A stretch of 64,000 nucleotides of DNA from the NCBI RefSeq assembly GCF_037042905.1, contig NC_087249.1, positions 34,410,001 to 34,474,000 on the forward strand. The letters run 5' to 3'. A program made the translations under genes and the position numbers. Positions 3,190 to 54,088 of this stretch are shown in pieces. The stretch comes from Lytechinus pictus (taxonomy: Eukaryota). Below the pieces are notes generated by a model. It did not search any database and was not told where the DNA came from. It worked only from the letters and a program-made list of their open reading frames with translations. Position 1 is the first letter of the stretch. The number at the start of each line of letters is the position of its first letter.

Positions 3190-3398
3190 GGTGATTTCAA
3201 GTTCAGTGTTCACCTTTTGGTGTTGGTGTTAGATTAATTTTTACATGAGCATAGGACCAAACAAAATGAATTTGGTCCGGTAAAGTCACTCACTAGGTGT
3301 TTAGCCATTATTTAATACTGTGATCGGTATCATGTTTTGGAGCTAGGAAACATAATCCAAATTGTGCATCTAACACCAACATCGGACTTGAAATCACC
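3190..3398. mobile_element. Small MITE-like inverted-repeat element
   Basis: Ends GGTGATTTCAAGT ... ACTTGAAATCACC. Confidence 0.55.
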
Positions 3399-4378: not shown

Positions 4379-4703
4379 GGGTCATGGTTTCATGAAAGGA
4401 CTTGTCGGGCATCATATCCAACATGTTCTGTTTTATCCGACAGTTACCATAGTAACAGTACATCTCAGAAGCCAATCAAAATCAAGGAAAGATGTCAGGG
4501 GAGCATTCCATGAAAGGACTTGTCGGACATTTCATCCAACAAGTTTGTTTTATCCGACAGTCGCGATAGTAATAGTGCTTCTCAGTCAATCATATTCAAG
4601 GAAAGTCGTCAGATCTGACCAGTTGTTGGACACCAAATGTCCATGAAATGCTCCCCTGTTCTGACAACTTGTCAGACGAAGATGTTGATGAAACACTCTC
4701 CAG
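4379..4703. mobile_element. Harbinger-like MITE family A: one copy inserted into another
   Basis: Inner copy GGGAGCATT..AATGCTCCC (~4499-4655) interrupts an outer copy at GTCAG; same family as the copies at 6181 and 29593. Confidence 0.7.
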
Positions 4704-5828
4704 ATGCGCATAAGTTTCTTCTTTTTTTTATTCAATGGCATTGCCCAATTTAAATCAGAGAACACTATTGTGGAAAATTGTTGGCAATTACCTAAGTTCA
4801 TTTCAGCAACAGGAACTTTTATAAAGAAAGTGGCAACACAAAGCTCTGGAACTTGTCAACATAACCACACATAATACTATCCCATGGAATAAACTCATGG
4901 GCGATAATCATTACAAGCATTCATATATTCACACAAATATTAAATTCTCCATTTGAATTGCATTTGTACAAAAGGCGCCAAGGAGAAGGGATGGAGATTT
5001 TGTTTTCCTACATACAAATGAAACAACTGCCCTTTTTCTTCTTGAAAAAGTGCTTCTATTAAAAAACATTGAACTATACAGAGAATGCTGTACACATACA
5101 AAGGGCTGCAACCCTTCCCCGCCCCCTTCATCACTGGTAAGGAGCGTGCCTTTCAAGAGTTATTATCTGTATAATCGAAGCAGTAATTACCGACAACATT
5201 GATCTTTCTCAGGAAAATAAATACTAGACAAAAATACTGGATCATCACATTTGAATATAAAAACAATTCAAATGTTCAAATGTATTAATTTTCCAATAAA
5301 AATGGATGATTGTGTTCAAGCAAACAGGGCTATTAAAATCTCAAGGTTTATCAAAGGGTCATGATAAATAATTTTAAAAACATTTCATTAAAAAAGACGT
5401 TAAGAGATTGACAGGAGTATTTCACTAAGCTATTTGTCATTGATTTACATTGACAATCATTATAAGCTGCTGAAATCTATGTTTGTGATTGGCTTAAAGC
5501 AAATTTATCAGTAAAAATCACTGACACAACACTTCATGATTGGGGACCTGATACCTAACATTGTTCATTAAAAAAAATCTCCCTCGCAATTAAAGCTCCG
5601 ATTGGAAAGGATAATCCCAGTGACACATTTTTGCCCTACTCCCATTGGGCAATAGCAGCTCTTCTTGCAATCGATCCACAAACGAGTTATCTTCAACCTT
5701 TGACGGCTCAGCACTGCTTTTCCCCATAGACTTGATCTTACAGAGGGAGGCGAGGGCGATGGGTGGAACATGTGCCAAGGATTTTGGAATATGAGAAAGC
5801 ACAGAGCTAGTCTTGTGCATCCAGTCTC

Positions 5829-5903
5829 TTAGTGGGTTAATGATTTGTAGATGGCCGATGTGTCCTTGTCTCCTAGACCCATATTCTTTGCTCTCTTGTA
5901 TTG
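5829..5903 (-). CDS. GLYR1: GLYR1 last coding exon [24 protein letters not shown]
   Basis: ttgcag acceptor and TAA stop at 5831-5829; resembles the human C-terminus YKRAK..D.SAVY. Confidence 0.93.
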   Translation of the reverse strand, partial: QYKRAKNMGLGDKDTSAIYKSLTH

Positions 5904-8900
5904 CTGCAAAATAAAATGAACAATTCAATGACTAGGTAAATGGTGGTTGTTCTTTCAAATACAGGAAGAAACAGTCTAAAAATTGTTGTAAAAAGTTGCT
6001 TATAATGCAAGTAAAAAGGCATTGTAATCACCAATATGGGTCTATTTATCATAAGCAACATAACAACAAAGACCCAATTAACACATTTGTCTAAAGATGG
6101 CCACATATTAAACTGATTTAAACCATGTTAAGCCATGGTTTCACTTCGTATACAATTGTAAATACTGGCAATCTGGTCTTCCGGGGAGCGATTCATCAAC
6201 ATTTTCGTCCGACAAGTTGTCAGATAAGGGGGGCGTTTCATCAACATTTTTGTCCGACAAGTTGTCAGATCTGACAACTTTCCTGTATTCTGATTGGTTG
6301 AGAAGCACTGTTACTATAATAACTATCGGATAAAATAGGACTTGTCGGATAAAACGTCCGACAAGTCCTTTCATGAAACGCTCCCCAGGTAATATCTTTC
6401 TGACTTACCTCATTAACTGCTGATGAGACTGGTAAGGGTTGATCAACCTGCTCTGACATAGCTAGTGCAAGCTTCAGATCTTTCTGTTGGTATTTCAGAG
6501 GGAAAGCCGGTGGGTACTTGTTGGCGAGGATTGCTATAGGAATGAAGAAGAGGAGAACTCATTTAAGGTCTGTCAACTTATGATGCTGTAGATGCAAGCA
6601 ACAACATTGTATTTAAAGCACAAGCATCACAAAAGCTGAGATAAGAGCAGTATTTATTTGGAGGCATCACCGATTGAGAGAAACATATGCTTCACAAAAA
6701 GAATTTTCAGAAACAGTCGAGTCTCCTTTATACATGATGTGACAATGCTTGGCAACATTTTTCATATTGTTCATACAAAATAAGACAAAATACATCATTC
6801 ACTTTAAAGTAAAAAAAAAAGGGTCAGATATTGCACAAATAAACTCATGATATCACATTAATTCCATGACATCATTACTCATATCATATGATTCACAATT
6901 GCAATATCATGTCATGAATAACATTGAAGGACGTTGTTGGTTTTCCCATGCAACTCTGTAAAGATGATTTTGTGCTAGCTTGTTTTCAGTTGTCATAACC
7001 ATTTTTTCAAAGATTATTAGTGGTTCTATATTTTTGTCACAAAGAAACAGAAGAAAAGTTGCTTGCCTCTGCATTTTTTTTTCTGAGCTTTGCCACTCTG
7101 TGCCTCAACAATAAATAATAGCTGGATTTATAAAATGCTTTTTGCCCGAGGATACAAAGCGCTGCTATTATTACCCCGGCTTTAGCTTGAGCTACCATCA
7201 CCAGCGCTCAGTGCATGCAAGGAATTAATCCTGCCGGGTCCCCATTCACCTCACCTGGGTCGAGTGCAGCACAGAGTGGATACATTTTTTGCTGAAGGAA
7301 AACACGCCATGGCTAGGAATCGAACCCACGACCCTCTATTTCAAAGGCGAGAGTCAGAACCACTAGACCACGATGCACCCATTTAACCAATGACCCAATT
7401 TGTTTGATGATATAAAAACAGCACTAAAAAGTTATGATGCTAGAGCAAGCATCCATAACCAAAGTCAATGTGGGAGCATTGCAGTCAACCTATTCATCAA
7501 GAACAGCCATACATGATGCGTTGGAATAACTAAATTCTTAGAATTTAGAGTTTTTCTTTCCCATTTTTATTTTAATAGCAGATTCTCAGCATGTACAGGT
7601 AATGACTTGAATTCCACATGCTTGTTGTGGTAAAATGAATTCCACTGTAACAAAGCCTAAGCCTGTAACATCAAGGTTTGCAATAAATTGCAAATATGAA
7701 AGAACAATTCTGATTGGTTCTAGGTCATTGTTTTGAATGAAATGTGCATGCAACAGTGATCTTCATTGGCCCATGCAATTTAGCGGTTGATTGCACACCT
7801 GTGTTTTATAGAGCCCTGAATATATCAATACAAGACAAGCCTTGGTATTCCACCTGGGTAACATTGGCATGTGCCAACAAACATATATGGTTCATCAGGC
7901 AGAGATGCATTGCACAATGACCAAACAAGCTCAAAACTTCCTTCTAACCTTTTCCTTTTCCACTAATAAGAGGGTTGGCGATTGATCCAAGATTGAGAAT
8001 GTCGAGAAGAACGCTTTGACTGAGGCCTGACTTATCAGCAAGGGCCATTCCTTCTGCAAAGCTGCACATGACGCTGCCTATGATCATGTTGATGACCAGT
8101 TTCATCCGAGCTGCATTACCTGTGTCAACTACAGAATATTAAAAAAAAAATTATACTAGTAGGCATGCAACAAAGAATTTATCATATTAAAGTAGGAAAA
8201 TCTGTTACCCAAAAAGGTGTTTTCTATGCCTGAAAATGCAAATTTCCTAACATTTTTTTCAAAGTGGTATTGCTCCAGGAGTGTCGATGTATAGACAAAC
8301 CATTAGCCACCACTATCTATTAGTGTGAAAAAACCTATTAACACATTAAAACACAACCTGAAATAAGTTTTAGCTATTCCTTACCATCTCCACCTTTCAA
8401 CCTTTTTCATTGTTCAATATTGAAATCTCTGTTTATTGACCAAGGGACAAGTTTTTCTTGTCCAAATTCAATTGAAAAGCATTAAATACATTTACCCACA
8501 TCACACATTATCCCTGGTAGGCAAAATAAATGACTTACTAAGATAGAATGCTTTCTTTCCCATAGATTGAAAACATGATTCACACTCGTCAAAGAGTTCT
8601 TTATCTCCAGCTGCAATGATGATGAGGGAACCTTCCATGGCTGGTTGGACGCTACCACAGACCGGTGCCTCTAAGAACCGGCCATCCCGTGCTTGAACAG
8701 CCTACAAATGAGAGGATATGAAATAAGTGCCTGAAGGTACAAATTTTAAAACAATACAATATGCTTACAGAGATATACAAACTTTGTGAATGGAGATTGG
8801 ATAGAGAAGTCCACAGTGATATTGGCAGGCCAATCAGTGCTCACTAAAATACAATTTTTTTCCCCCTTTAATTTAATTCAATATAGGAAGTTGTTAAGGG

Positions 8901-11900
8901 AAGCAGAATTGATGTACATTAATCTACTCCAATAAACTGACAAAAGTAAAGAAGTAAAGTAAACTTTACAGACATGTCTGGAAAAAATGACAATTTTCTT
9001 TCAATATGAAAGAATAGTATATTCTTTGCACAGACAAATTTAGGTTCATAGAACATTAACGTTTATCAGCCAAAGCCAGGCCTTCAAAACCAGTCAGAAA
9101 TGGAACATTCAATTGATTACACTAGATCAAAACATACAGCACTCAAACAAAATTGTTCTTATAATGAATATTTAGATTTCATATTATCGGATCACTTAAT
9201 CTGTATCTTGACTTTTTTCTTTGCTATAAAATCTTTTACTCATATTATAAATGTCATGCCTACTTACTTCTGCAACTCCTGTCACTGTACCAATATCTAC
9301 TGTTGACATGTCCACAAATGCTTTACCGTCACTGATACCATCTAATACACCATTCTCACCAAATACAATCTGTACAAGAAATGATAACAGATAATTGAAA
9401 ATGACATGGTGTTGTAAAAGGTAGATTTGGAAGTAAAGAAGAATCTGATAGAAGTAACTTGACATGATCTTCAAAAGACAAGACAGGCTTAAATCATAAA
9501 CATGAAATCATAACAAAGATTTTGAAGATATAGAAATCACAATAAAAGTACTTGAGCAATACGATCTTACTGGGTTATACATTTTCTATTGAAGAAATTA
9601 AATCAATGCATATGAAGATAAATAAGAAACAAAACATAGAAAATAGTAGTGTTTGTAAGGAAGCCAACTTGGCAACAGAAAACAGGTGTTGCAAGTGGGG
9701 GCTGATGGACAAAATAACAATTTAAGCAAATGAAAATGGTATTTCATTAAAATATCTTAATCAAACAAATATTTCATTAGTTTCCAAAATCACAATTAGA
9801 TTTATTTTCACATCATGTATTTTTTTTAAATTGCGTATCAAAAGCACAAAGTAAATCTAAGCTCTTCATCTCAGAAGGAAAAAGTATAGATATGAGCAAA
9901 ATTTGAATCATTCTTTATTTTCATATAAAATGAATAAAAAATATGGACATTTCTCATGTGAAATCACTGATGATGATGTAATAACTTACCGCTCTGACTG
10001 CTTCTGAATCTGATACCATAGAGAATGTGATGTCACATGATGAAACCAGGTCCGATACTGTTTCAGCTTGACTTGCACCAGCTTTCACAAACTCTTCACA
10101 CTATAAGATGGAACAGAGCGACGTCGGGTTAGATCAATTATCACAACTACAATTGATGAGTTTTCACCAGAAGTCTCTTCAAAGTTATTCTTCAATAATG
10201 GTAGTCACTATTACCGTGTTTACACTTAATCGGCATTTGAATCGGCTCGCGGTTCTGAACCGCGAGCCGATTCAGCATCGGCTTTTTCATAGCGTGTAAA
10301 CGCGAGCAACTTGAATCGGCTCGCGGTTCAGAACCGGCAATTTGCACCACCAAAGTAGTAGGTTCTGAACCGCGAGCCGATGCAGAATCGGCTTTTTTAC
10401 TACGTGTAAACAGAAAGCCGATTCTGCACCGGCAATTTGTGCGCATTTCAATTACTTTACCATTGTGACGTAATTGTAAGCGCACTGATCCAGCGTTGTC
10501 TTTATTATGACGTATATTGTTGGTATGCGTATCATTTCAGGTTTTTGCATCGGCTCGCGGTTCTGAACCGCGAGCTGTAACAACGTGTAAACGCAATCCA
10601 AATGCCGATTCTGCATCGGCATTTGGTTCAGAACCAAATGCCGATTAAGTGTAAACACGGTATATATTGTCAGCTACATGTAGCATAAAAATGAATCCAT
10701 ATAATCATAGTTGATGCTAAAATTCAAACACAGGTGAAATAGATTATTATCACTCTGGTCATCAGATATTGGTTTGCCTGCATACATTGTATACACTTTC
10801 TCCACTCCATAGGTAGAGTCTCTGCAAGAAAATGCTAGTCATACATGTACATTGTGTTTTTCATCCTACCGGGTACCCATTGCAAACCTGAGTAAAGAAT
10901 AGCAACGTGTAGATCGAAAGGATGCTGGTGCCACAATGGGATTTGAACACACAACCTTCTGATAACAAGGTATGAGTCATAACCACTAGGATACCTACAA
11001 CATGTAGCTATTACTCAATTGCAACATTGTTTGTAAAAAAAAATTCTATTCATCTTTTAAATATTAATAATTTTTAGTAGAATATCTACGCCAATGAATT
11101 GAAAATATACATTTACTTCATTTGGTCTGTTTAATTCCATTTTCATTTCATTTAGCACCCACAAACCTGGGGAAAATTATAAAGTTTCTTCTATCCTTTT
11201 TGCATGTCCCCTTTCAAAACATAATGAGAAATCTAACTTTTTCTTTTTTTTAATTCAATCTTTACAAAATGTACACATTTATTCTCATTGGTTAACATTT
11301 ATAAGCAAACAACCCACTTCGCTAGCCTGCTTCTGCAAGAACTTCAAAAGTGTAGATAAATTTATTTAGTGTGCACATCAAACTGTTTTAGTATACTGCC
11401 CTCTTGTGGCAGAAAGTTGTACAATTTTAGAAGCCAATCATGGTGAGATTTCCTAGATCTCCCAGAATCTTGTATGCCACAATAATTACTATGTGACAAA
11501 AAAAAGTTTGTCATTTTTCATTCTAAAAAAAGGCCCCTCACATAATATGAAACATTATAAGTACATGTATGTTGAGAGAAGAATACCGGTATATATGAAC
11601 ATAATATGTCATAACAGAAAAAACCTGATGTAAATACATGTGAGAAATACTTAGATATGAAACACTGCAACACTATGTGAATAGAAACTCATAAAGACAT
11701 TAGAAAGTAATATGAAGCATATCAAATTTACTATATTCTTATCATAGAAAATAAAGTGTATGAAAATCCTGTACATTGTTTACCTTTTGTGCAATAAAAT
11801 CCCACTTTAGCAAAACACAAATTCATATAATAACAAAATAATTACAGGAAACAAAAGGAGTCTGAAATATGCACTACAAAGCTCTATATTAGTACCAGAA

Positions 11901-38900: not shown

Positions 38901-41900
38901 CTTTTCTGGTACTGGAAACTGATTCGTTTGCAAGAGATTTGACACACATGTCGCAAATGGAAGCTTGAAAATGGTTTTAAGACATTGACCCAAGGATGAG
39001 TTCCTTCCACGCATTGAGTGCTGGTAGCGGCAGCTCAAGCTTAAGCTGGGGGAATACTAACACTAACAGTAAGAATGGGAGTAGTTATATTTAGATAGAT
39101 GGTGCTATATACATTGTAAATGCCTATGCCTAATATCATTATTATCATTTTATGGTGTGTGAGATGACTAGTAGAATAATACAACCTGCGAGTAATGTCT
39201 TGAGTGTATCAGAGACTGTAAAATCCCATCGATATTTGAATGGCAGTCATACATTGGAAAAAGATATCTCCTTAGCAAATATATTGTGTGGGGCAGTAAT
39301 TTAGTAATAGCAGAGAAGTGAATATTATTGGTGGTAAATGGGGATACACATCTATCTTTTTCAAGTATAGTCCGAAGTAACCCTGATTGACTGTAGACAG
39401 AATGCTGTCCAAGAAAAAAAGAGGAAAGTTACTCCGATAGGGCAAAAATATTATGAGAGGGGCCTGCTACATCTTGGTTTCTGTAACTCCAAACATGCAC
39501 CCCTGTGTAATACTTAAATAGCAACAGTAGAATATTGCACGTTGAGCTCCGATTGTCAAGTAAGCAGCCTCATGATGGTAATTCAAAAATGATCTCTGAT
39601 GGTTGCTAGCATACATTTGTTCAACCACAACTCTTGAGTCATGCAAACTTTTATGCAACCTTAGATTTTTTTAATGATTTTTATCACTTTTTTAAAAACC
39701 TTTTAATGATTAATGCAACCTTAGAGATATTGCGGGTTTACAAGAAGGCAACCAGTAAATATATCATGAAGCAAATGTAACAGTGAATTTCTTAGGAAAA
39801 AAAAGCTTGGCAAACACATGCTAAATACTGTGAACTGGATTGATCAACAGATTTACAATCAATGCATGGTTTTGTAGATTTGGATTTGCTTTGATTTTCA
39901 TGGTTTTCACTGTGTTTTTTTAGAATTCAATTTTTAGAATTTGTTTGGGCCTGAAAACTTGTGTTTTCTGTGAAATACTGTGAATTCCATGTTCTTCCTG
40001 AATTCCCTGAAAATTTTCCCTTTTCCAAATCAGGGAAAACTGGGACTTGAGTGTTGCACAGCCTGGGTAGAAATGAGAGATGATCAAGGAATCTTACCTT
40101 TTCTGATGTCCTGTTCCAGACAGTGACATCGTGACCTGCTTTGATTAGATTCATTGCCATACCAGTACCCATTAGACCAAGACCAATGAAACCAATCCTA
40201 ATAGAGATCATCAAAGGTGAGAGATGTAAAATTGTTAATCCAATTATTCATGAATATACATCAATCCATCTCAAACAACTGAGCATGCATATTTTTCTAG
40301 AAAGAGGACCAAATACCAGACACATTTTTCTTGAAAATGATCAAGGAATAGCAAGGTTCTTCTGTTTCTTTAAATTAATGCTTGAATTAATAAATTTTAT
40401 TAACTGAAGACATTTTACAGGCTAGCTGTTGGACTTACTCAACACTTCAATATTCTATCATCTTTCTGAGATAGTATTAACTTACTTTTTCTCTGTAGGT
40501 TTTATGTCTTTCTTTGCTGTTTCTCCTTTCTGAGCAAGATGGGCCTGAAAACTGTTGTACAAATTGAGGGACAGGAACGACATATCTGAACGGGACTTCT
40601 TACCAGGAGCTGCTGTACTTGCACCCGTACTCGGCTGAACAGGAAGGAGAAAGCAAAAACCACATAATTAATGGTAATTGTTTGTATAATAAAAGGAAAG
40701 GCATGCCACATGGTTCTATACCAAAGGTATGACAAAAACTGGTTAATTTTTTTTCTCCTTTAATTGTTAAAGAATGGTCAAATAAAGAAGGGGGGCTAAT
40801 GCCAATGATCTAACTATTGCTATTCTTATCAAGAGTGATAAATATTTATGTGTCTAAAGATAAGAGAAGAGGTTGATTCAAATTAAGAGTCATCTGCACT
40901 CTTTTCCTTTCTATTGCATAAATTTCATTGTGAAGGATTGACCAATTATCTAGCTATATACAGAGCTATAAATCTTCAAAACATGTGTTAATAAAAAAAA
41001 CAAGTGCACTGATATTTTGGCCAAATCAGTGCATGATATAAAAGATCGGTCAAAACCAGCTATGAACTATCTTTGATCAGTAGCTCTAAACTATCTCTGA
41101 TCATTATTTGATAAGTGTTTGTTTTTTCAGCATGACAAATCATAAACTCAAGTAGGGACAGTGCTTTCCGCGATCGCGGAAAACGGACGGAATTCACAGA
41201 ATCGGCCTTTTGAAATGGAAAGTGGCTTTTCAAACGGAAAATCACGGAAAACATGTTTTTCCTCAAAATGCACAGAATAGCAACAGAAATTACTCCCAAA
41301 TCCTCATCGAAATACAAATATCAACTGGCCAAAAACACGATCTCACTTCGCTACAACAATCCACACGTCGTGACTGCACTCGACTCCATCACAGATCGTA
41401 TCGAAATTACATTCACGTCCACATAGCGATTGAATATCTCTCAATGAACGTAGAATAAAGGCATAAACACGGCCGTGTGTTGCCGCCATCTGCTTCCGAT
41501 CATAATATCATGATCGCGGTACTTCTAAAATCCAAAATGGCGGAAAGGCGAAAGTTGTCGACTGCTCGAAATGATGTAAAACAAGTCCCAAAATCATCGA
41601 TAAAATATCAATCAACCTTAAAATAATACTAATAATGTGAAAGGTGAGGATGTATTCATGTTAATTATGTTTCTTTAAATAGTTTTTGATTCATATCTCT
41701 TCAATCACGATAGATTTTAAGCGTTGTTAGTACAGTGGCAGATAGAAAGTTTGACCAGCGGGAGCATTTTGACATCGCTCATGCATTGAGTATTGATTTT
41801 GTATGTAAACGGAATTGACACAAAGTCTACTCATGAATTGAGCTGCGATTTCCGCGCAAGCACAATTTGCGTTTGCGATGTTTTGGAATCAGCAGTAAAT

Positions 41901-44900
41901 TAATACGTGTGAGGAACGCGATACTGGCTCTAAATCACCAATTTTGAGACTAACCGAAGGATGGATATGGAGTGAAATTACATTGAAAAGTAAGAAGATA
42001 AGATTTTTATTCTTTTTAAGGTCGTTTGGTGCATGATTTTTACAATAAATATGCATTTAGTTCCACCTTTGTCATTCGGAGTATCAGAGCGAGTTCACCA
42101 TCTTGATGTTCGGGTAGGTGTAGCATAGTGTAGCGGTAGTGGAGCCTTCACTAACATCACTTGAGGTAGTATAAAAGTGACTTACGGTTGCAGAGTTATG
42201 CGTTATAACATTGACCTTAAAATGACCTTTGACCTTACCATGTGACCTCTGATTTCGCCATGATATGCAGGTCTCCTCAGTACATCTAAAAACCCAGGTT
42301 TGGGTGAAAAGTGACTTATGGTTGCGGAGTTATGTGTCATAAGAGTCTTGCACGTAAACTTTAACGTTGACCTGAAACTGACCTTTGACCTTACCATGTA
42401 ACCTCCGACTGCAGCATAACACACAGGTCCCCTAAGTACATCTACCATCCAAGTTTGGTTGAAAATTGACTCACGGTTGCGGAGTTATGTGTCATAAGAG
42501 AGTCTCGCACGTAAACTACAACGTTGACCTGAAAACAACCTTTGACCTTACTATGTGACCTCCGACTGCAGCATAACATGCAGGTCCCCAAAGTACATCT
42601 ACCATCCAAGTTTGGTTGAAAAGTGACTTACGGTTGCGGAGTTATGGGTCATAATGTTTGTGACGGACGGACAACATTTGGATCCCTTACGGTAGTCTTG
42701 CCTTCACCTCTGGTGGGCGAGATAAAAATGACTATCATCAGGTCCACACCTCCTTCCCCTCCTCATCTCCCTCTACCCCTTACTCCTCCCATCCTCTCTA
42801 CCCCTCACTCCTCCCATCTCTACCCCTTACTCCTCCCACCCTCTCTACCCCTTACTCCTCCCGTCCTCTCTACCCCTTACTCCTTCCATCCTCTCTACCC
42901 CTCACTCCTTCCATATCTACCCCTCACTCCTCCCATCTCTACCCCTTACTCCTCCCACCCTCTCTACCCCTTACTCCTCCCGTCCTCTCTACCCCTCACT
43001 CCTCCCATCTCTACCCCTTGCTCCTCCCACCCTCTCTACCCCTTACTCCTCCCACCCTCTCTACCCCTTATTCCTTCCATCCTCTCTACCCCTCACTCCT
43101 CCCATCTCTACCCCTTACTCCTCCCACCCTCTCTACCCCTTACTCCTCCCGTCCTCTCTACCCCTTACTCCTCCCATCCTCTCTACCCCTCACTCCTCCC
43201 ATCTCTACCCCTTACTCCTCCCTTCCTCTCTACCCCTTACTCCTCCCATCCTCTACCATTTACTCCTCCCACCCTCTCTACCCCTTACTCCTCCCGTCCT
43301 CTCTACCCCTTACTCCTCCCATCCTCTCTACCCCTTACTCCTCCCATCCTCTCTACCCCTTACTCCTCCCATCCTCATGATTCTCTTTCATCATCTACAT
43401 TTCTTCCTTCTTATTTTAATCTTCCTCTCATATCCCCCTTCTATTTCTTTGACATGTCCACTTCATATTAGCTTTTAGCTTCTTTAATCTAAACGTTAGA
43501 CTTTTTCATACTTTGAAACAAAGACTGCTCAACTTCTGGACAGCCAAAAACCAACCAAGACTAAAGTTGTGCAAAGTCTTAAAAACATTGGTTGGAAACT
43601 AAAAATAAAAAGTTTGATCTGCAAGATTTGCTACCAACCGCCAATCTGCCTGCTCAATCGTCTGCTGACTCCTATATACACCCCCTTCAAAATGTGTTCT
43701 GTGGGGATGTCACTCGGTTACCAGAAATTCACAACATATATGCTCATATTGAATAGGCGTAATGCAAAATGAATATGCCTACCCTCTTTTTGGGTGTTGG
43801 TTTCTTGGTCACCTCTCCATCTTCCAAGGTTTTAAAGGGCCTTCCCCGTTTCTTGGGGGATGCAAGTGGTGTATTGATCTTGGTGAAGGGGGAGCTGGAA
43901 TTTGACCCTTTCCTCGGTGAGCTACCAGGAGATGATGCTGACTGTGAGGAGTTTAACTAGAAAGAAAAGAGAAACAGAATTCAGATGTTATAACAATAGG
44001 AGGAATATAATTGGAAAGAAAATAGAAATGCAATTCAGATGTTTATATTCTTATTCAACATCAAACATGAATTGAATTATCAATTACCAAATTGTAGTTT
44101 CCCATTTGTATTATCAAAACTTGTGTGCATCTGAATCCATTGTCTATTCATCCATATTAGACATCTCCGTGTGTATTTTGTATTGACATGTACATGTAAG
44201 CAATACAAATTTCCACTGTAAACATTACTTATTGAATTGAATTTAATGACATAAGGATGAATTTAATAGGAAAGAGAAGAGAGAGATAGAATTCAGATAA
44301 CAGCAAATTTATGTTAAAATTCATGACTGAACATTTATACCATTGCCCCTCTTTGTCTATCTATCTATTACATCACAAAAACTCAGAATAACAATTCTCC
44401 CAAATAAAATATAATTCTCTACGAAAAAAAAATGTCTCACCTTCTTCTTCCCTGCCATAGGTTCTCTGGAATAATCTTTAGTTGGTTTGCTGATAGACTT
44501 CAAGAAAATATCATCATCGTCATCATCATCATCCGATGGAGGGTGGTATGGGGAAGTGGTCTGGCCCTATAGGGATGGAGAATTGAGAGAAAATGTTTGG
44601 AAAATTTATCTTTTCATCCTCCTTTTTTATTATATGTCTTAAATTTTAGTGATTACAAGGAAAAGTTACCTAAAGTGCACCTCCCTGCTGATATCATCTA
44701 AGACTTTACTATTTCAGCAAATGAACAGCTACTCCTCATATGTAGCCCTATATATCTACGAATTTATTATTCCATGATACTCAGGATTGGAAAACAAACA
44801 AAGTGAATTTGGATAAGGATTGCTACATACTGGTACAATAAAAAGAATATACTTTATATTTTCAAGGAAATTACACTTCAGTAAATTGTCAAGCTTTTAA

Positions 44901-50900: not shown

Positions 50901-53900
50901 TTAAACGTGAAAACCGAAAACTTGAAAGCACAATGGGACAACTCTTATTAGTATTAGTATCAAATACTGTAGCATGCACTGACCTCAGCTGGAGTTCCTA
51001 CTGATTGTTCATTTGATTCCATGTCAGACTATAAATATAAATTATAATAAAAAAATATTACATAGCTGCTCCTATGGCATCTTTAACCCTAAATAGACTG
51101 GGCTATTTCAATGCCTAATAAGACTGGGTTGGGGGAGCTGATTTAGCCCCCCCCCCTTATGAACTCGGCCATTGATCGTGCAATCACGATAAAAACTGGC
51201 ACGCACATTAACCATGGCATAATCTACAAAAATATAAGATCGAATTCTGTGAAAAATCTCATTGCTAATTAATTATGCTAACTTATGCGTAAAATCAAAA
51301 GTTTGCTCTAATTAACAAAAAATGCCCCTAAAATGCTAATTTTTTGTTTACAGACTCTGAATAGGAATCTGATAAAATGTTCCTTAAAAATGTCAACATC
51401 ACATTTAATTTCTCATGTATTTTATTGTTTTCAAAATTTCTTTGTTTTTTTTTCATCTTTTTTTGTGTTGTTTTTTAATGGAAATTTATTTTGGCACTAA
51501 ACAAGATGAAATTAATTGATTTTAATCAGTAAAAGGAAAAATAATGATCCATTTATGAATTTTGGCTAAAAACACCAGTTGCATTGGATTTGTACACAAA
51601 TTTGCATTTTTGAGTCTGCATGCACTTATGAAATGTTGCACGATTTCGGAACCACGTACCCGGGGGTCGCAATTTTGTTCTCAAAAGTTGCGCAAGACTT
51701 GAAAGTAAAAAGTCCACAAGCGACGCAGTCAAAAAATTCGGGGTGGCGGAGTTATCCTAGAAAATGTCGAGGGAAGGGGCAGTCTTATTAGGGTTAAAGA
51801 TCATCAAAAAACCTGCAGGCAGGACTAGCTAGAAAATGGTCTAGGGGGCCGTTTCATAAAGTTATTTGTAAGTTAAGAACGACTGGTGATCCTTTGATAT
51901 TCACCATTAAATGTTCATTTATGATTATTCAGGACATAAGAAAGGATCACCAGTCATTCTTAAAGTCTCTCTTAACTTACGAAAAGCTTTATGAAACACC
52001 CACCAGTTCTGGGGCCTGTTGCAGAAAAATTGCGTTTAAACGCAAGTCAAAATGTCAAGCACAAGTCCCGAATATGGTGCTTCATTGGCTGACAATCAAG
52101 TTGCGCAAGATTTTTCTAGTTGCGTTTGATTGCAACTCTTTCTGCAACGGGCCCCTGGTCTTCTGAGTAGCATTTCAGGAAACATCTTGTCAGTGAGTGA
52201 TTTTCACCAACAAATTTGCTGTGAGCCAATCCGATGCTAGGTTATCAGTATCTTGTATCAGTTCTCAGTGAAATTCAGTATTGGTTTCTTGAAATACCCC
52301 TGAACATATGAAACAATTTCAGAAACATTTGATATCTGTTCATGCCAAATCAGTAAATAACTTGTCTTGTCTGCAGATCTCAGAATGACACACTACCTTA
52401 ACAATTGGCAAGTAAAAAATGAATTATTAGAGTCTTTATAGAGCTTGAACAGTGATTGGATAGCGTTATGCAGAGTATGATTTCTATGATCCAAGCTATT
52501 ATATTTGCTTGCTTTTCTGAGTTTGGTAAACATTTAACATTGCTACAAATCAATAAAGAATTCACATTTAGAATAGACTGAAACACTGAAGCACCAGAGA
52601 AAAAGACAATTCTTAGTGCACCGGAAAAACTGGTTTCCTATGTGTAAAAGTGAAAATATCAATGAGATTTTCTCGGTGTATTCTGATTGGCAATTATCAA
52701 TGGTCTTTGTCTGCTGAGTGCTTTAAAGTGTAAGTTTTGGATGTTTGAGTGCGCATTGGAAATCGTTCGCATTGTTCAATGGGAGCAGGCCCTGAGGTCT
52801 ATTAATAACAAGAGCTTGCAATTTCCTTTCTGAAGCCCTGAACAACATACCACATTTCATGCCACCCAACACTTGACCCTTGAGGTCTCATCCTATGCCT
52901 TCGTACAGCACCTAAATCAGCACAAAGTCAGCACCACATGATGCAAGTGAAAAGTGTTTACAGAGCATTGAGGATCGCCCTTACCTTGCTAGCCTGGTTC
53001 TTGACGATAGCCTCTTCAATGGCATCAATGGCCTTGGTGAACTTGGCCCCCTTTCCTGCCTTAGAGAGTGTAGCTTTGTTCTCTTCGTAATGCTTCAGAC
53101 TTTCCTCCTTCACCCAAGCACTAAAGAAAGAACGGTGAATTGATAGTAGCTATATATAATCTTGTTTATGATATGCATTGTATATGAACTGGGAGAGCAG
53201 ATAATTTTCAATGAAATCCTTCAATCAATCAAATCACTTTAAAATATTCAATTTCAATACATCAATACTGAGTTTCTATGGTAGAAACCATAATGGCCAC
53301 CATAAACAGTCCATAGATTCTTTATTACTTCTATAGAATGCTAGATTTTGTCTCCCTTATTCGTTATCAATTACAACAATAAAATTTTCAAACAAAAAAG
53401 TAATTATTTTTTACACATTTTAATAGTTTACTTACTGGTCTTCAGTACCAAAGAAGAAGACAAAGCGAACAGCTTTCTTGCCTGCTGGCTTCTTAACATT
53501 CTTCCATGGCTTTACAATCTGTAAGAATGAAAAAAAAATATATGAAATAGACTTGTGGTTTTCAAAAGGAATGAAAATAGAATATCCTGAAGGGGTTTCT
53601 AGTAGTTAAGCCTTAATAATTCCTAAGATCACATGAAATAGACGATTATGGCTATACTATCACAGGGAAAATGAATGAAATGAAGAAGGCCCCCTACAAA
53701 CATTAACTATATAAGGGGAAATATGCTACCTTAAAGCCATACTTTTTAGCAGAAGAGTGGGATATTCAGTTGAAAATATGACAAAGAATTTCAAAATTGC
53801 ATAAGGAACTGAAAAGAGTAATATCTGATATATAAATCTTGTCATACACATTGAGATTGATCAGACAATTACCTGTTACAAAATCATCTCAAGAGTCCAC

Positions 53901-54088
53901 AGTGTACATACAAATAGCATACATTCTTTAATGCTCTGTAGACTGTGAGGTGGTTGCCTAATCTTACACTAAAATGTTTAGACACTTCCTACTTATTCAC
54001 TCTATTCAATAATAATAACCATAATGAAGCAAAAAGGAAATTCATACTTACTCTTCCTGGCCATGCAGGGAAGCTGCTCATCTTGGCC
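5829..54088 (-). CDS. GLYR1: GLYR1/N-PAC/NDF orthologue (PWWP + AT-hook + beta-hydroxyacid dehydrogenase); 14 coding exons found, 5' partial
   Basis: Hand-spliced exons 54088-54052, 53518-53436, 53120-52985, 51028-50984, 44566-44441, 43956-43783, 40634-40486, 40197-40098, 10100-9990, 9369-9268, 8701-8539, 8128-7949, 6533-6409, 5903-5829. All have GT-AG boundaries and consistent phases, totalling 1606 nt (~535 aa). Motifs: [12 protein letters not shown] and FFGTEDHAWV (PWWP), KKRGRP (AT-hook), [40 protein letters not shown]. Confidence 0.95.
6181..6388. mobile_element. Harbinger-like MITE family A with partially duplicated end
   Basis: TIR GGG(A/G)GCGTTTCAT..ATGAAACGCTCCC and CAG flank; about 20 bp from a GLYR1 donor site. 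Confidence 0.75.
6409..6533 (-). CDS. GLYR1: GLYR1 exon [41 protein letters not shown]
   Basis: 125 nt; FxLxxxxKD motif. Confidence 0.95.
7140..7380 (-). mobile_element. tRNA-derived SINE
   Basis: Minus-strand A box TGGTCTAGTGG and B box GGTTCGATTCC followed by a core CTCGACCCAGGTG..AATGGG. Degenerate or partial relatives at ~10860-10990, ~39010-39060 and ~56746-56850. Confidence 0.8.
7949..8128 (-). CDS. GLYR1: GLYR1 exon with catalytic helix [12 protein letters not shown]
   Basis: 180 nt; Lys codon AAA at 8102-8100. Confidence 0.95.
8539..8701 (-). CDS. GLYR1: GLYR1 exon [33 protein letters not shown]...KAFYL
   Basis: 163 nt; FLEAPVxG substrate-binding motif. Confidence 0.95.
9268..9369 (-). 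CDS. GLYR1: GLYR1 exon [34 protein letters not shown]
   Basis: 102 nt; VDMST motif. Confidence 0.95.
9990..10100 (-). CDS. GLYR1: GLYR1 exon [37 protein letters not shown]
   Basis: 111 nt, AG/GTAAG boundaries; CDITF motif. Confidence 0.95.
10212..10662. mobile_element. Palindrome-rich MITE, 28-bp TIR, 3-bp TAT flanks
   Basis: TACCGTGTTTACACTTAATCGGCATTTG ... CAAATGCCGATTAAGTGTAAACACGGTA, with repeated internal palindromes ATCGGCTCGCGGTTC-GAACCGCGAGCCGAT. Confidence 0.85.
12831..13243. mobile_element. PIF/Harbinger-like MITE, ~65-bp TIR, TTA TSD
   Basis: AGGCCACCGCACACCTTACGACCCGACTGG ... CCAGTCGGGTCGTAAGGTGTGCGGTGGCCT, flanked by TTA on both sides. Confidence 0.85.
13253..13921. mobile_element. 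Non-autonomous DNA transposon, 29-bp TIR
   Basis: AGTGGGTTTTCGCCCAGCGTCGTACGACG ... CGTCGTACGACGCTGGGCGAAAACCCACT; internal ATG followed by a GTGAGT donor (~13543-13572) may be a residual first exon. Confidence 0.8.
15560..15871. mobile_element. MITE
   Basis: Ends GGCCCATATTCTG ... CAGAATACGGGCC. Confidence 0.6.
16370..16822. mobile_element. MITE with AAACTAGTTT/AAACTGGTTT subterminal repeats
   Basis: Imperfect TIR TTCTCAT..CTAAAACTAGTTT / AAACTAGTTTTAG..ATGAGAA. Confidence 0.6.
17005..17243. repeat. Tandem duplication, ~125-bp unit x2
   Basis: TGAATATC.CATTTA.AGGGACCT..AAGAAAATT ... TTCTCACTCATG occurs twice. Confidence 0.7.
17600..18012 (+). other. Probable non-coding first exon of the nested vasorin-like gene
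   Basis: Strong donor CA/GTAAGT at 18013, upstream (GT)n and relatively CpG-richer sequence; would splice to the acceptor at 20115. The 5' boundary is a guess. Confidence 0.45.
20186..21922 (+). CDS. Vasorin-like type I membrane protein (signal peptide-LRRNT-LRR-LRRCT-EGF-FN3-TM-cytoplasmic tail), 578 aa, nested antisense in a GLYR1 intron
   Basis: First in-frame ATG at 20186 (AAGATGG) followed by a hydrophobic signal peptide. LRRNT CPISCTC..VDCS; LYLNDN and LHLQSN repeats; [13 protein letters not shown]; [23 protein letters not shown]; FN3 [16 protein letters not shown]; [25 protein letters not shown]; PPPPY. Splice acceptor tttacag at 20115. Confidence 0.92.
   Translation: MAVVFTLFILKGIMLLVVLHAYVTHGKSLNGLLERREECPISCTCYNHTVDCSFMNLRKVPFNIPPKTKALYLNDNVIDKLDFGLLSRLSRLEELHLQSNKLEGITEKDVEFLPQLRIVDLRDNPLVCDCSLAHVMGRTLDDTKKFNVILGDTKCVAPMQNEKRQASDVLRKLDCRHRSRRGEMQCHPRYCLNGGTCIEGNERPFCECPDSFVGQYCERPNSDVVRIFLEDITVHSVKVSWRPPHHVDVEKYFVTFREQSPAADPKHFWTREDYYIFVRLIPGSFYQVCIIGYLSEDDTLDECCKEFATQPHPSQPGPGHPDHPDHPDPHFPATESRDREDVIHKAAVILGSIIGVCAFFIICLTLVYKFRSLSNTRNLDGRSPSPPIDDENEAETEISQAPGSENDAGRGVFVVSVPAPEQPAAQPENEVLETDTAMTDPIPINRVLHALQPPSSRGQQEAPSQNTVVLYRSENRNTVEDLSRDNPSGTAPFFIVADGNHYPLDPALSHVLCSAMSRSNVPRQPLPNEPPPPYSERAEDTQLTQVSIRNRTESDHLSNVTCERNLDASSVDTIEEDK
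25338..25790. repeat. 99-bp minisatellite, ~4.5 copies
   Basis: ACAGACCAAC starts at 25338, 25437 and 25536; later copies diverge. Confidence 0.9.
25923..26496. mobile_element. Kolobok-like non-autonomous element, TTAA TSD
   Basis: TTAA|AGGGATGCTCCAGGCTGAA ... TTCAGCCTGGAGCATCCCT|TTAA. Confidence 0.8.
26645..27116. mobile_element. MITE with GGGGTTAAG/GGGCTAAG subterminal repeats
   Basis: Ends TGCTTTT(A)ACACTGCA ... TGCAGTGTGAAAAGCA. Confidence 0.7.
28936..29107. mobile_element. Harbinger-like MITE family B, CAG TSD
   Basis: CAG|GTGGGTGTTTCATAAA ... TTTATGAAACACCCAC|CAG; related copies at 31038-31209 and ~51845-52003. Confidence 0.8.
29363..29775. mobile_element. Harbinger-like MITE (CTG TSD) containing a nested family A MITE (29593-29749, CAG TSD)
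   Basis: CTG|GGCTCCGTCTTACAAAGA ... TCTTTGTAAGACGGGGCC|CTG. Confidence 0.8.
30079..32068. mobile_element. 2-kb non-autonomous DNA transposon with GCGAGCGCGAAGCGCGAG repeats
   Basis: CAGGGGTGTATCCAG ... CTGGATCCGCCTATG, with TCTAAG duplicated on both sides; contains a family B MITE at 31038-31209. Confidence 0.8.
33535..35888. mobile_element. Sola-like non-autonomous element (4-bp AATA TSD) with internal ~395-bp tandem array
   Basis: AATA|GGGTCAATCCACGTCAAATCAACCA ... TGGTTGATTTGACATGGATTGACCC|AATA; repeat units start near 33593, 33987, 34380 and 34776. Confidence 0.8.
36479..37222. mobile_element. piggyBac-like non-autonomous element, copy 1
   Basis: TTAA|CCCTAAATAGACTGGG ... CCCAGTCTTTTTAGGG|TTGA; homologous along its length to 51087-51793. 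Confidence 0.85.
37911..37982 (+). repeat. tRNA-like head (SINE or pseudo-tRNA) within a repeat
   Basis: A-box-like TAGCTAAATCGGT and B box GGTTCGAGCCC; no convincing acceptor stem. Confidence 0.4.
40098..40197 (-). CDS. GLYR1: GLYR1 Rossmann-fold exon [33 protein letters not shown]
   Basis: GxGxxG dinucleotide-binding motif; overlaps ORF 39927..40214. Confidence 0.96.
40486..40634 (-). CDS. GLYR1: GLYR1 linker exon ending IKPTEK(K)
   Basis: 149 nt; its end resembles human ITPTDKK just before the Rossmann fold. Confidence 0.88.
42170..42728 (+). mobile_element. Helentron-associated (pearl/Tsp/DINE-like) element with ~150-bp internal tandem repeats
   Basis: About 3.5 units containing TGACCTTTGACCT, then a short (GACG)n microsatellite, a terminal stem-loop TCTTGCC..GGCGAGA and an A-run. 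Confidence 0.6.
42750..43376. repeat. C/T-rich minisatellite, ~23-27-bp unit CTCTACCCCTTACTCCTCCCATC
   Basis: Directly visible tandem array; explains the spurious Pro/Leu-rich ORFs at 42623 and 43018. Confidence 0.95.
43783..43956 (-). CDS. GLYR1: GLYR1 AT-hook exon ([10 protein letters not shown])
   Basis: 174 nt with a strong polypyrimidine acceptor; RGRP AT-hook core as in human GLYR1. Confidence 0.88.
44441..44566 (-). CDS. GLYR1: GLYR1 acidic linker exon (poly-Asp)
   Basis: 126 nt open frame [24 protein letters not shown]...GKKK, AG/GTGAG boundaries. Confidence 0.8.
45400..46606 (-). mobile_element. 5'-truncated CR1/L2-type LINE RT remnant
   Basis: Frameshifted ORF pieces [46 protein letters not shown]; (AATA)n-like tail near 45400. 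Confidence 0.85.
46790..47905 (-). mobile_element. Penelope-like retroelement 3' fragment (RT thumb + GIY-YIG endonuclease)
   Basis: ORF 47150..47974: [50 protein letters not shown]. Has a 60-bp internal duplication and a 33-bp tail duplication at ~46796/46841. Confidence 0.9.
46880..46920 (-). ncRNA. Minimal type I hammerhead ribozyme motif (Penelope-associated)
   Basis: UCAC-UUGAUAA-A-GAGU(UGCAGCGGC)ACUC-GAAA-GC-UC-GUGA: stem I UCAC/GUGA, U3-A8 core variant, stem II, GAAA, palindromic AGCU stem III, UC cleavage site. Confidence 0.7.
48594..50269. mobile_element. Non-autonomous DNA transposon (P-element-like CAAGG ends, 7-bp TSD GTTTATT)
   Basis: GTTTATT|CAAGGCTCCACATTAAC ... GCTAATGTCGAGCCTTG|GTTTATT; subterminal GGTGGCCC/GGGCCACC repeats. 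Confidence 0.75.
50984..51028 (-). CDS. GLYR1: GLYR1 candidate small linker exon [15 protein letters not shown]
   Basis: 45 nt, phase 0-0, ttatag acceptor and gtcagt donor; no homology support. Confidence 0.6.
51087..51793. mobile_element. piggyBac-like non-autonomous element, copy 2
   Basis: TTAA|CCCTAAATAGACTGGG ... CAGTCTTATTAGGG|TTAA. Confidence 0.85.
52012..52154. mobile_element. Harbinger-like MITE, CTG TSD
   Basis: CTG|GGGCCTGTTGCAGAAA ... TTTCTGCAACGGGCCC|CTG. Confidence 0.75.
52985..53120 (-). CDS. GLYR1: GLYR1 exon: [45 protein letters not shown]
   Basis: 136 nt, AG/GTAAG boundaries; PWWP C-terminal helices. Confidence 0.93.
53436..53518 (-). CDS. GLYR1: GLYR1 exon: [27 protein letters not shown](H)
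   Basis: 83 nt, AG/GTAAG boundaries; matches the PWWP core FFGTEDH. Confidence 0.93.
54052..54088 (-). CDS. GLYR1: GLYR1 exon: PWWP motif (W)[12 protein letters not shown]
   Basis: 37 nt, ttacag acceptor and gtaagt donor; begins in phase 2, completing a split Trp codon. Confidence 0.9.

What the first reader, a model, noticed from the sequence alone, without database searches (positions are those of the whole stretch)
6409..8701. GLYR1/N-PAC orthologue keeps the catalytic lysine: a possibly active dehydrogenase fused to a PWWP chromatin reader
Seen: the catalytic helix reads [12 protein letters not shown] (Lys codon 8102-8100), with DMST, EAPVCGS and [13 protein letters not shown] also present. 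Established: human N-PAC has Met at this position (AAKMMLIVNM) and is regarded as catalytically inert. Active beta-hydroxyacid dehydrogenases and plant glyoxylate/succinic-semialdehyde reductases use this Lys and carry a very similar [13 protein letters not shown] segment. WNRT fits NADP(H) binding. Inference: this lineage may retain an ancestral NADPH-dependent reductase tethered to chromatin through the PWWP domain and AT-hook, linking metabolism to nucleosomes.
Basis: partly seen in the sequence, partly recalled or inferred. Interest (0 to 1): 0.8.

Follow-up and report, generated by a model that had tools for sequence, protein, structure and literature searches.

The report
Sea urchin GLYR1/NDF keeps catalytic lysine
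This is the sea-urchin copy of the known chromatin protein GLYR1/N-PAC/NDF; it keeps the enzyme's catalytic lysine that vertebrates lost, but so do most other non-vertebrate, non-arthropod animals sampled, so it is the ancestral state and not proof of an active enzyme.

Summary
A minus-strand gene of at least 14 exons (54088 to 5829; exon 1 lies outside the window) encodes a PWWP domain, an AT-hook and a beta-hydroxyacid-dehydrogenase domain. Its protein is 531/534 identical to the RefSeq model 'putative oxidoreductase GLYR1 [Lytechinus variegatus]'. Codon 8102-8100 is Lys where human N-PAC has Met437.

RNA contigs of 2.8-2.9 kb from four runs join the PWWP, AT-hook and dehydrogenase exons, including across the 30-kb intron. 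The 'separate genes' refutation therefore fails.

- The Lys is not special to this lineage. All sampled echinoderms, hemichordates, amphioxus, tunicates, molluscs and one nemertean keep it.
- It was lost four times: vertebrates to Met, ecdysozoans to Asn, Lingula and Tubulanus to Arg.
- The urchin keeps five of the six residues that matter in Arabidopsis GLYR1. The substrate-binding Ser121 equivalent is Cys (EAPVCGS, against the canonical PVSGS).
- That position changed 13 times within the fused family.

Catalysis is plausible (about 35%) but untested. The gene is already annotated, and human and fly NDF work without the Lys. Interest is moderate.

The parts
54052..54088 (-). Exon 2 (first exon inside the window; exon 1 with the start codon lies beyond 64000): start of the PWWP domain, [12 protein letters not shown]
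   Evidence: tblastn with P0002/P0156. Acceptor ...ctattacag and donor GTAAGT. Pfam PWWP 0.031 on the piece.
53436..53518 (-). Exon 3: PWWP middle ([15 protein letters not shown]...FFFGTED)
   Evidence: GT-AG borders.
52985..53120 (-). Exon 4: PWWP C-terminal part (HAWVKEESL...[12 protein letters not shown])
   Evidence: Pfam PWWP 0.0033 on the piece. 100% identical to P0156. RNA contigs of X2-X4 run from exon 5 directly into its last codons (loose end at 44568).
50984..51028 (-). Alternative 45-nt micro-exon ([15 protein letters not shown])
   Evidence: 100% match to P0156 isoform X3. GT-AG borders. Included in the RNA contig of run X1 and skipped in X2-X4.
44441..44566 (-). Exon 5: acidic stretch plus the conserved [10 protein letters not shown] linker motif
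   Evidence: RNA contig piece 44441-44568 with 0 mismatches. The motif is conserved in echinoderms, molluscs and amphioxus.
43783..43956 (-). Exon 6: Ser-rich linker with the AT-hook SPKKRGRP (RGRP at 43848-43837)
   Evidence: Aligns with human SPRKRGRPPK. RNA joints 43956|44441 and 40634|43783.
40486..40634 (-). Exon 7: linker just before the dehydrogenase domain ([12 protein letters not shown]...KPTEKK)
   Evidence: RNA joints on both sides.
40098..40197 (-). Exon 8: first Rossmann strand and helix, [16 protein letters not shown], and the NADP motif VWNRT (40118-40107)
   Evidence: Pfam NAD_binding_2 2.2e-12. The RNA contig continues from 40098 into the first codons of exon 9, [10 protein letters not shown] (loose end).
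9990..10100 (-). Exon 9: NAD_binding_2 continued, after a 30-kb intron
   Evidence: Pfam 3.1e-05. GT-AG borders. Spliced to exon 8 in RNA.
9268..9369 (-). Exon 10: FVDMSTV. The Thr (9303-9301) is the AtGLYR1 Thr95 equivalent.
8539..8701 (-). Exon 11: substrate-binding loop EAPVCGS, with Cys where enzymes have Ser121
   Evidence: Pfam NAD_binding_2 2.6e-10..
7949..8128 (-). Exon 12: catalytic helix [12 protein letters not shown]. Lys codon 8102-8100 (AtGLYR1 Lys170, human Met437). The Asn four residues later is the Asn174 equivalent.
   Evidence: Pfam NAD_binding_11 2.2e-08. PDB alignments..
6409..6533 (-). Exon 13: [13 protein letters not shown] (Phe231 and Asp239 equivalents)
   Evidence: Pfam NAD_binding_11 2.2e-07..
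5829..5903 (-). Exon 14: C-terminus [24 protein letters not shown] and stop codon TAA

Best explanation
The window holds exons 2-14 of the sea-urchin orthologue of GLYR1/N-PAC/NDF. One mRNA encodes an N-terminal PWWP reader, a disordered linker with an AT-hook, and a C-terminal beta-hydroxyacid-dehydrogenase (GLYR-type) domain.

Shown here:
- The gene model, the single transcript with two isoforms, and the orthology.
- The Lys on the catalytic helix is the ancestral residue of the whole fused family. Most non-vertebrate, non-ecdysozoan bilaterians sampled keep it. It was lost independently in vertebrates (Met), ecdysozoans (Asn or Ser), Lingula (Arg) and Tubulanus (Arg).

Inferred:
- The protein works as its human and fly orthologues do: a gene-body chromatin factor (H3K36me3 reading, nucleosome destabilisation, Pol II elongation).
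- The dehydrogenase domain is the NADP(H)-binding oligomeric core.
- The active site is 5/6 intact in urchins (Ser121 to Cys) and 6/6 in crinoids and holothurians. Residual or real carbonyl-reductase activity is therefore plausible, about 35% for the urchin protein in vitro.
- The pattern of repeated loss suggests that catalysis is not what the family as a whole is selected for.
For: - Gene model: every junction is GT-AG, and the spliced protein is 531/534 identical to 'putative oxidoreductase GLYR1 isoform X3 [Lytechinus variegatus]'.
- Domains: Pfam on that orthologue gives PWWP 1.3e-18, NAD_binding_2 3.6e-48 and NAD_binding_11 3.8e-25.
- One transcript: in each of four RNA runs a single 2.8-2.9 kb contig joins exons 8, 7, 6 and 5 with 0 mismatches. 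It runs on into exon 9 (across 30 kb) on one side and into PWWP exon 4 or the micro-exon on the other.
- Orthology: the fused animal proteins form one clade (SH-aLRT 98) apart from 11 stand-alone enzymes, and the phylum clades are recovered inside it.
- Residues: Thr95, Lys170, Asn174, Phe231, Asp239 and the NRT Arg are kept. Ser121 is Cys.
- Distribution of Lys. K: echinoderms, hemichordates, Branchiostoma, Ciona, Oikopleura, molluscs, Lineus. M: all vertebrates listed. N: Priapulus and arthropods. There are four changes on the tree, and all outgroups have K.
- Retention of the 40 positions invariant in the stand-alone enzymes: window 37, crinoids 40, holothurians 38, human 31, arthropods 29-35.
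- Literature: human Met437 and the inert scaffold role (PMC13144531); NDF function in human and fly (PMC6004073; PMC8973848); the AtGLYR1 residue list (PMC5399074).
Against: - No biochemical data exist for any Lys-bearing orthologue, so both 'active' and 'inert' remain open.
- Ser121 is Cys in urchins, and that position changed 13 times in the fused family. It is Ser in 10 of 11 stand-alone enzymes.
- Hemichordates keep Lys and Asn but have lost Phe231 and Ser121. Lys can therefore persist without an otherwise intact site.
- The 11 stand-alone reference enzymes were picked as top hits to the urchin's own exon 12, which may flatter the urchin in the retention count.
- PWWP binding to H3K36me3, nucleosome destabilisation and oligomeric state are transferred from human and fly, not tested.
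- Cyclostomes, annelids, flatworms, nematodes and non-bilaterians were not sampled.
Confidence: 0.8

Rival explanations
1. The urchin protein is a working NADPH-dependent glyoxylate/succinic-semialdehyde (or related small-carbonyl) reductase held on chromatin by PWWP and the AT-hook, and this activity matters biologically.
For: - Lys170, Asn174, Thr95, Phe231, Asp239 and the NRT motif are all kept.
- The PPAFPLK[YH]QQKD segment is almost identical to AtGLYR1.
- 37/40 enzyme-invariant positions are kept in the window, and 40/40 in crinoids.
- The domain aligns without gaps to characterised GLYRs 3doj, 3pef and 3pdu at 1e-89 to 1e-96.
- Lys is conserved across all five echinoderm classes.
- The four lineages that lost Lys also tend to have lost more of the other invariant positions (28-35/40).
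Against: - Ser121 is Cys here. The position is free to vary (S, C, V, L, I, T, F, Q) in the fused family.
- Lys was lost four times without loss of the gene. Human and fly NDF are functional without it.
- Hemichordates keep Lys in a degraded site.
- No assay exists.
Confidence: 0.3
2. Inert scaffold. The domain is already a pseudoenzyme in urchins. Lys is kept for non-catalytic reasons (helix packing, cofactor or oligomer contacts) or simply because nothing has replaced it.
For: - The family's known functions do not need catalysis.
- The substrate Ser is labile, and Lys persists in the degraded hemichordate site.
- Branch lengths from the base of the fused clade are similar for K lineages (about 0.4) and non-K lineages (0.5-0.6).
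Against: Neutral persistence of Lys, Asn, Thr, Phe and Asp together, plus 37-40 of 40 enzyme-invariant positions, over the whole history of echinoderms is hard to explain without constraint on the pocket. In human N-PAC the reverse change M437K disrupts the oligomer. The residue is therefore not structurally neutral, and Lys lineages must differ around it.
Confidence: 0.45
3. Two neighbouring genes (a PWWP/AT-hook gene and a stand-alone reductase) wrongly read as one.
For: A 30-kb intron splits the Rossmann fold, and the intron between exon 4 and exon 5 is more than 8 kb.
Against: - Spliced RNA contigs in four runs cross every junction from PWWP exon 4 to dehydrogenase exon 9.
- The GxGxxG exon at 40.1 kb cannot make a domain without the exons at 10-6 kb.
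- A 3085-nt Logan contig encodes the whole 567-aa fused protein in a holothurian.
- The same architecture is annotated in dozens of phyla-wide orthologues.
Confidence: 0.01

Closest known systems
Human GLYR1 / N-PAC / NDF (PDB 2uyy; Met437)
   Same: Same architecture: PWWP, AT-hook SP[KR]KRGRP and a C-terminal beta-HAD domain. The dehydrogenase domain aligns end to end at 1.5e-99. It falls in the same clade. The NRT NADP motif, Thr95, Asn174, Phe231 and Asp239 equivalents are shared.
   Different: - Human has Met where the urchin has Lys.
- Human has NFKPDFYLKY where the urchin has [10 protein letters not shown].
- Human keeps 31/40 enzyme-invariant positions against 37/40.
- Human keeps Ser121, whereas the urchin has Cys.
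- The human LSD2-binding linker segment has no clear counterpart in the urchin alignment.
- The urchin protein has an acidic N-terminal extension and a KPxKDY[ST]REP motif.
Drosophila/arthropod NDF (CG4747 family)
   Same: PWWP plus beta-HAD domain orthologue. It is the experimentally defined nucleosome-destabilizing factor.
   Different: In the arthropods sampled here, Lys is replaced by Asn or Ser. In insects and crustaceans Asn174 is Gln and PVSGS is QVQGS. Fly NDF has no AT-hook. The urchin site is far more enzyme-like.
[quoted passage not shown]
   Same: Gap-free alignment over about 282 residues at 1e-89 to 1e-96. The Lys exon scores better against 3doj (9.6e-19) than against human N-PAC (6.9e-12). 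Lys170, Asn174, Thr95, Phe231, Asp239, WNRT and PPAFPLK.QQKD are all shared.
   Different: These are stand-alone enzymes with no PWWP, AT-hook or linker. Ser121 is Ser there and Cys here. The conserved His in PLKHQQKD is Tyr here. The animal fused proteins form a separate clade.
CtBP (a dehydrogenase-derived transcriptional corepressor)
   Same: An analogy only: a hydroxyacid-dehydrogenase fold reused as a nucleotide-binding, oligomerising core of a chromatin regulator with a disordered tail (PMC9907507).
   Different: It belongs to a different dehydrogenase superfamily (D-2-hydroxyacid) and is not homologous in the relevant sense. It was not tested here.

Membership tests
GLYR1 / N-PAC / NDF (animal PWWP-dehydrogenase chromatin factors) | N-terminal PWWP domain | tested here: met
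   Window pieces give PWWP 0.031 and 0.0033. The 99.4%-identical orthologue P0156 gives PWWP 1.3e-18 over residues 47-128.
GLYR1 / N-PAC / NDF (animal PWWP-dehydrogenase chromatin factors) | C-terminal beta-hydroxyacid-dehydrogenase domain (NAD_binding_2 plus NAD_binding_11) on the same polypeptide | tested here: met
   Pfam results. Spliced RNA contigs link the PWWP, linker and dehydrogenase exons.
GLYR1 / N-PAC / NDF (animal PWWP-dehydrogenase chromatin factors) | Orthology: groups with the animal fused proteins, not with stand-alone enzymes | tested here: met
   ML tree with the fused clade at SH-aLRT 98; the window sits with the other urchins (99) inside the echinoderms. This was a quick search without bootstraps.
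GLYR1 / N-PAC / NDF (animal PWWP-dehydrogenase chromatin factors) | AT-hook in the linker (present in human, absent in fly, so not strictly defining) | tested here: met
   SPKKRGRP at 43848-43837 aligns with human SPRKRGRPPK.
GLYR1 / N-PAC / NDF (animal PWWP-dehydrogenase chromatin factors) | H3K36me3 binding, nucleosome destabilisation, Pol II stimulation | not testable with these tools
   Known only for the human and fly proteins.
GLYR1 / N-PAC / NDF (animal PWWP-dehydrogenase chromatin factors) | Catalytic Lys replaced (Met437), the hallmark of the characterised vertebrate members | tested here: not met
   Lys at codon 8102-8100. This is a feature of vertebrates, not of the family: most invertebrate members keep Lys.
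Beta-hydroxyacid dehydrogenases, GLYR subfamily (active enzymes) | GxGxxG dinucleotide fold and the NRT/NRS NADP-specificity motif | tested here: met
   GLGLMGTG and VWNRT in exon 8.
Beta-hydroxyacid dehydrogenases, GLYR subfamily (active enzymes) | Catalytic Lys170 and Asn174 (AtGLYR1 numbering) | tested here: met
   K and N in [12 protein letters not shown]. The residue list comes from PMC5399074.
Beta-hydroxyacid dehydrogenases, GLYR subfamily (active enzymes) | Substrate-binding Thr95, Phe231, Asp239 | tested here: met
   DMST, PPAFPL and QQKD.
Beta-hydroxyacid dehydrogenases, GLYR subfamily (active enzymes) | Substrate-binding Ser121 in the PVSG[SG] loop | tested here: not met
   Cys in the window and in all three urchins. 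It is Ser in 10/11 stand-alone enzymes and Ala in one.
Beta-hydroxyacid dehydrogenases, GLYR subfamily (active enzymes) | NADPH-dependent reduction of glyoxylate or succinic semialdehyde | not testable with these tools
   Needs an enzyme assay.

The most novel reading that the evidence does not exclude
The ancestral bilaterian NDF/GLYR1 was a true NADPH-dependent small-carbonyl reductase bound to transcribed chromatin, and echinoderms still have it in working form. Crinoids keep 40/40 enzyme-invariant residues, holothurians 38/40 and urchins 37/40 with Ser to Cys. Vertebrates and ecdysozoans would then have turned it into a pseudoenzyme independently. That would make sea urchin embryos a natural system for asking what a dehydrogenase does on nucleosomes.
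Probability: 0.3. Interest if true: 0.6.

Novelty: new member of a known kind. Interest (0 to 1): 0.35.

Why it matters
Why NDF/N-PAC carries a dehydrogenase domain is unexplained. The two orthologues studied so far (human and fly) both lack the catalytic Lys, so the domain is treated as an inert scaffold.

The comparison made here shows that this is a derived condition reached at least four times. Many invertebrates, echinoderms above all, keep an almost or fully intact GLYR-type active site on the chromatin-bound protein.

This gives cheap, direct tests. Recombinant urchin, holothurian or crinoid domains can be assayed against K-to-M controls to ask whether a chromatin reader can also be a redox enzyme or an NADPH sensor.

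The gene itself is already annotated, and the Lys/Met contrast with enzymes is textbook for the human protein. The new content is the phylogenetic pattern, not a new kind of system.

Tried and rejected
- The first attempts at Pfam and PDB searches failed on coordinate order and were repeated.
- Exon 1 (about 51 codons, up to ...DLGDLVW) was searched for upstream of 54088 with sensitive tblastn and not found. It lies beyond the window end.
- Literature searches for a prior statement that invertebrate GLYR1 keeps the Lys found none in the held library. The key structural paper (Marabelli 2019) is not held, so absence of prior mention is not shown.
- The atlas search only returned the known family.
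- A tRNA-like stretch in the intron near 7300-7400 was not confirmed by ARAGORN or Rfam. The two Rfam miRNA hits near 10.3 kb are far below the gathering scores and were dismissed.
- Branch lengths were checked as a sign of stronger constraint in Lys lineages. The differences are small (about 0.4 against 0.5-0.6), so this argument was dropped.
- Structure prediction was not run. With 1e-99 to a solved orthologue it would add nothing on catalysis.
- The third database search was not spent on non-bilaterians, because only the best 120 hits are listed and vertebrate isoforms would fill them.
Full report
**What is there**

The region 6409-8701 holds three minus-strand exons of a much larger gene. 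I used the full-length echinoderm proteins returned by the searches as guides (P0002 from a holothurian; P0156, 'putative oxidoreductase GLYR1 isoform X3 [Lytechinus variegatus]'). With these I mapped 14 exons between 54088 and 5829. Every junction has GT-AG and a polypyrimidine tract.

The spliced product has 534 residues and lacks only exon 1, which lies beyond the window end. It is 531/534 identical to P0156. The window therefore comes from a Lytechinus-type sea urchin, and the gene is already annotated in RefSeq.

Pfam finds PWWP, NAD_binding_2 and NAD_binding_11 on the exon pieces. On P0156 it finds them with 1.3e-18, 3.6e-48 and 3.8e-25.

**The observation**

All the quoted motifs exist at the stated places. 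The Lys codon is exactly 8102-8100.

- phmmer against PDB aligns this exon to human N-PAC (2uyy), where the column is Met, and to Arabidopsis GLYR1 (3doj) and two Geobacter GLYRs (3pef, 3pdu), where it is Lys.
- The whole domain aligns without gaps to 2uyy (1.5e-99), 3doj (1.1e-95), 3pef (2.4e-93) and 3pdu (9.1e-89).
- The literature confirms that human Met437 replaces the conserved Lys, that the domain binds NAD(P)H but is treated as an inert scaffold, and that M437K breaks the oligomer (PMC13144531; PMC6004073).

**One transcript**

RNA runs hold about 16% of the sampled words of 6300-10200, close to the 17% of that stretch that the exons occupy. I laid four RNA runs on 39900-44700.

- Each run has one contig of 2.8-2.9 kb covering exons 8, 7, 6 and 5 with no mismatch and with the introns removed exactly.
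- At 40098 the contig continues into the codons for [10 protein letters not shown], the start of exon 9 on the far side of the 30-kb intron.
- At 44568 it continues into the last codons of PWWP exon 4 (runs X2-X4) or into the 45-nt micro-exon 51028-50984 (run X1).

The PWWP, AT-hook and dehydrogenase exons are thus on one mRNA, in two isoforms.

**Is the Lys special to this lineage?**

No. I tabulated the motif columns in about 260 homologues, with names.

| Residue at the catalytic position | Lineages |
|---|---|
| Met | every vertebrate listed, from eel and paddlefish to human |
| Lys | all five echinoderm classes, three hemichordates, Branchiostoma, Ciona, Oikopleura, all molluscs, the nemertean Lineus |
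| Arg | Lingula and Tubulanus |
| Asn (rarely Ser) | Priapulus and all arthropods sampled |

In insects and crustaceans Asn174 has also become Gln and PVSGS has become QVQGS.

An ML tree of the dehydrogenase domain (51 distinct rows, quick search) puts all PWWP-fused animal proteins in one clade (SH-aLRT 98), apart from 11 stand-alone enzymes that all have Lys, and recovers the phyla. The Lys position changes four times on it. Tunicates have Lys, so the change to Met falls on the vertebrate stem. Lys is therefore ancestral, and vertebrates and ecdysozoans are the derived cases.

**How intact is the site?**

Six residues matter in AtGLYR1: Lys170 and Asn174 for catalysis, and Phe231, Asp239, Ser121 and Thr95 for substrate binding (PMC5399074 citing Hoover 2013). 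The 21-residue offset of the 3doj chain numbering was checked on the printed alignments.

- The window keeps five of the six. Ser121 is Cys, so EAPVCGS is not the canonical PVSGS.
- The same Cys is found in Strongylocentrotus and Diadema.
- Starfish, a brittle star and bivalves have Val. Hemichordates have Leu and amphioxus has Ile. Crinoids, holothurians, tunicates and vertebrates have Ser.
- This position changes 13 times on the tree, although 10 of the 11 stand-alone enzymes have Ser.

I also counted retention of the 40 positions that are invariant in the 11 stand-alone enzymes:

| Lineage | Positions kept, of 40 |
|---|---|
| Crinoids | 40 |
| Holothurians | 38 |
| Window (urchin) | 37 |
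| Molluscs | 35-38 |
| Amphioxus | 38 |
| Ciona | 35 |
| Hemichordates | 32-33 |
| Human | 31 |
| Arthropods | 29-35 |
| Lingula | 28 |

The three positions lost in the window are Gly to Asp, Gly to Ile and His to Tyr. One caveat applies: the reference enzymes were chosen as top hits to the urchin's exon 12. The positions concerned are also conserved in 3doj, 3pef and 3pdu.

**Reading**

Echinoderm GLYR1/NDF carries the most enzyme-like version of this domain, so catalytic competence is a fair hypothesis, strongest for crinoids and holothurians. Three things weigh against catalysis being the selected function of the family:

- four independent losses of Lys with the gene retained;
- free variation at the substrate Ser;
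- Lys persisting in the otherwise degraded hemichordate site.

In addition, NDF activity has been shown for human and fly proteins that lack Lys. Branch lengths from the base of the fused clade differ little between Lys and non-Lys lineages.

I therefore read the gene as the ordinary urchin orthologue of NDF. It most likely works as a gene-body chromatin and elongation factor, with the dehydrogenase domain as its NADP(H)-binding oligomeric core. I give about 35% that the isolated domain shows real Lys-dependent reductase activity. I give less than that to the activity mattering on chromatin.

**The rest of the protein**

The PWWP core and the AT-hook align with human. The human LSD2-binding segment has no clear counterpart. 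A KPxKDY[ST]REP motif is shared by echinoderms, molluscs and amphioxus.

**Novelty**

The gene, its architecture and the human Lys/Met contrast are known. In the held library I found no paper that maps the Lys across animals, but a key paper is not held. I rate it a new member of a known kind, with a moderately interesting and easily testable evolutionary pattern.

Noticed in passing
window 50984-51028 (-): A 45-nt alternative micro-exon ([15 protein letters not shown]) lies between the PWWP domain and the acidic linker. It is included in the RNA contig of one run and skipped in three.
   Followed up: partly
window 42207-42654 and 42758-43000: The intron between exons 6 and 7 holds a 157-bp tandem repeat (2.9 copies) followed by a 25-bp repeat array. 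RNA contig word depth over 42154-42797 is 1,400 to 21,000, against 40-500 on the exons. This suggests a highly expressed or highly repeated element elsewhere in the genome.
   Followed up: partly
window 46064-47977 (-): Retroelement remains lie in the intron, sense to the gene: a reverse-transcriptase fragment (RVT_1 4.4e-07 at 46340-46651) and an upstream 275-aa open frame (47153-47977) with no Pfam match. Another first-stage note places a Penelope-type hammerhead at 46880-46920.
   Followed up: partly
window 44441-44566 (-), exon 5: The linker motif KPxKDY[ST]REP..GK is conserved in echinoderms, scallop and amphioxus but not recognisable in human, frog or cockroach. It might be an invertebrate-type partner-binding segment.
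   Followed up: no
tree (related proteins, not the window): The vertebrate dehydrogenase domain sits on a long stem (0.54) and then hardly changes from fish to human (tips 0.00-0.05; turtle and cuckoo are identical). That means intense constraint on the Met-bearing, non-catalytic form.
   Followed up: no
window 7300-7400 (-): An intronic stretch reads like a tRNA-derived SINE head. Neither ARAGORN nor Rfam reports it.
   Followed up: partly
window 10100-40098: The 30-kb intron falls inside the Rossmann fold, between the GxGxxG/WNRT exon and the next strand. Another first-stage note proposes an antisense receptor-like gene inside it at 17600-24290; I did not examine that.
   Followed up: no
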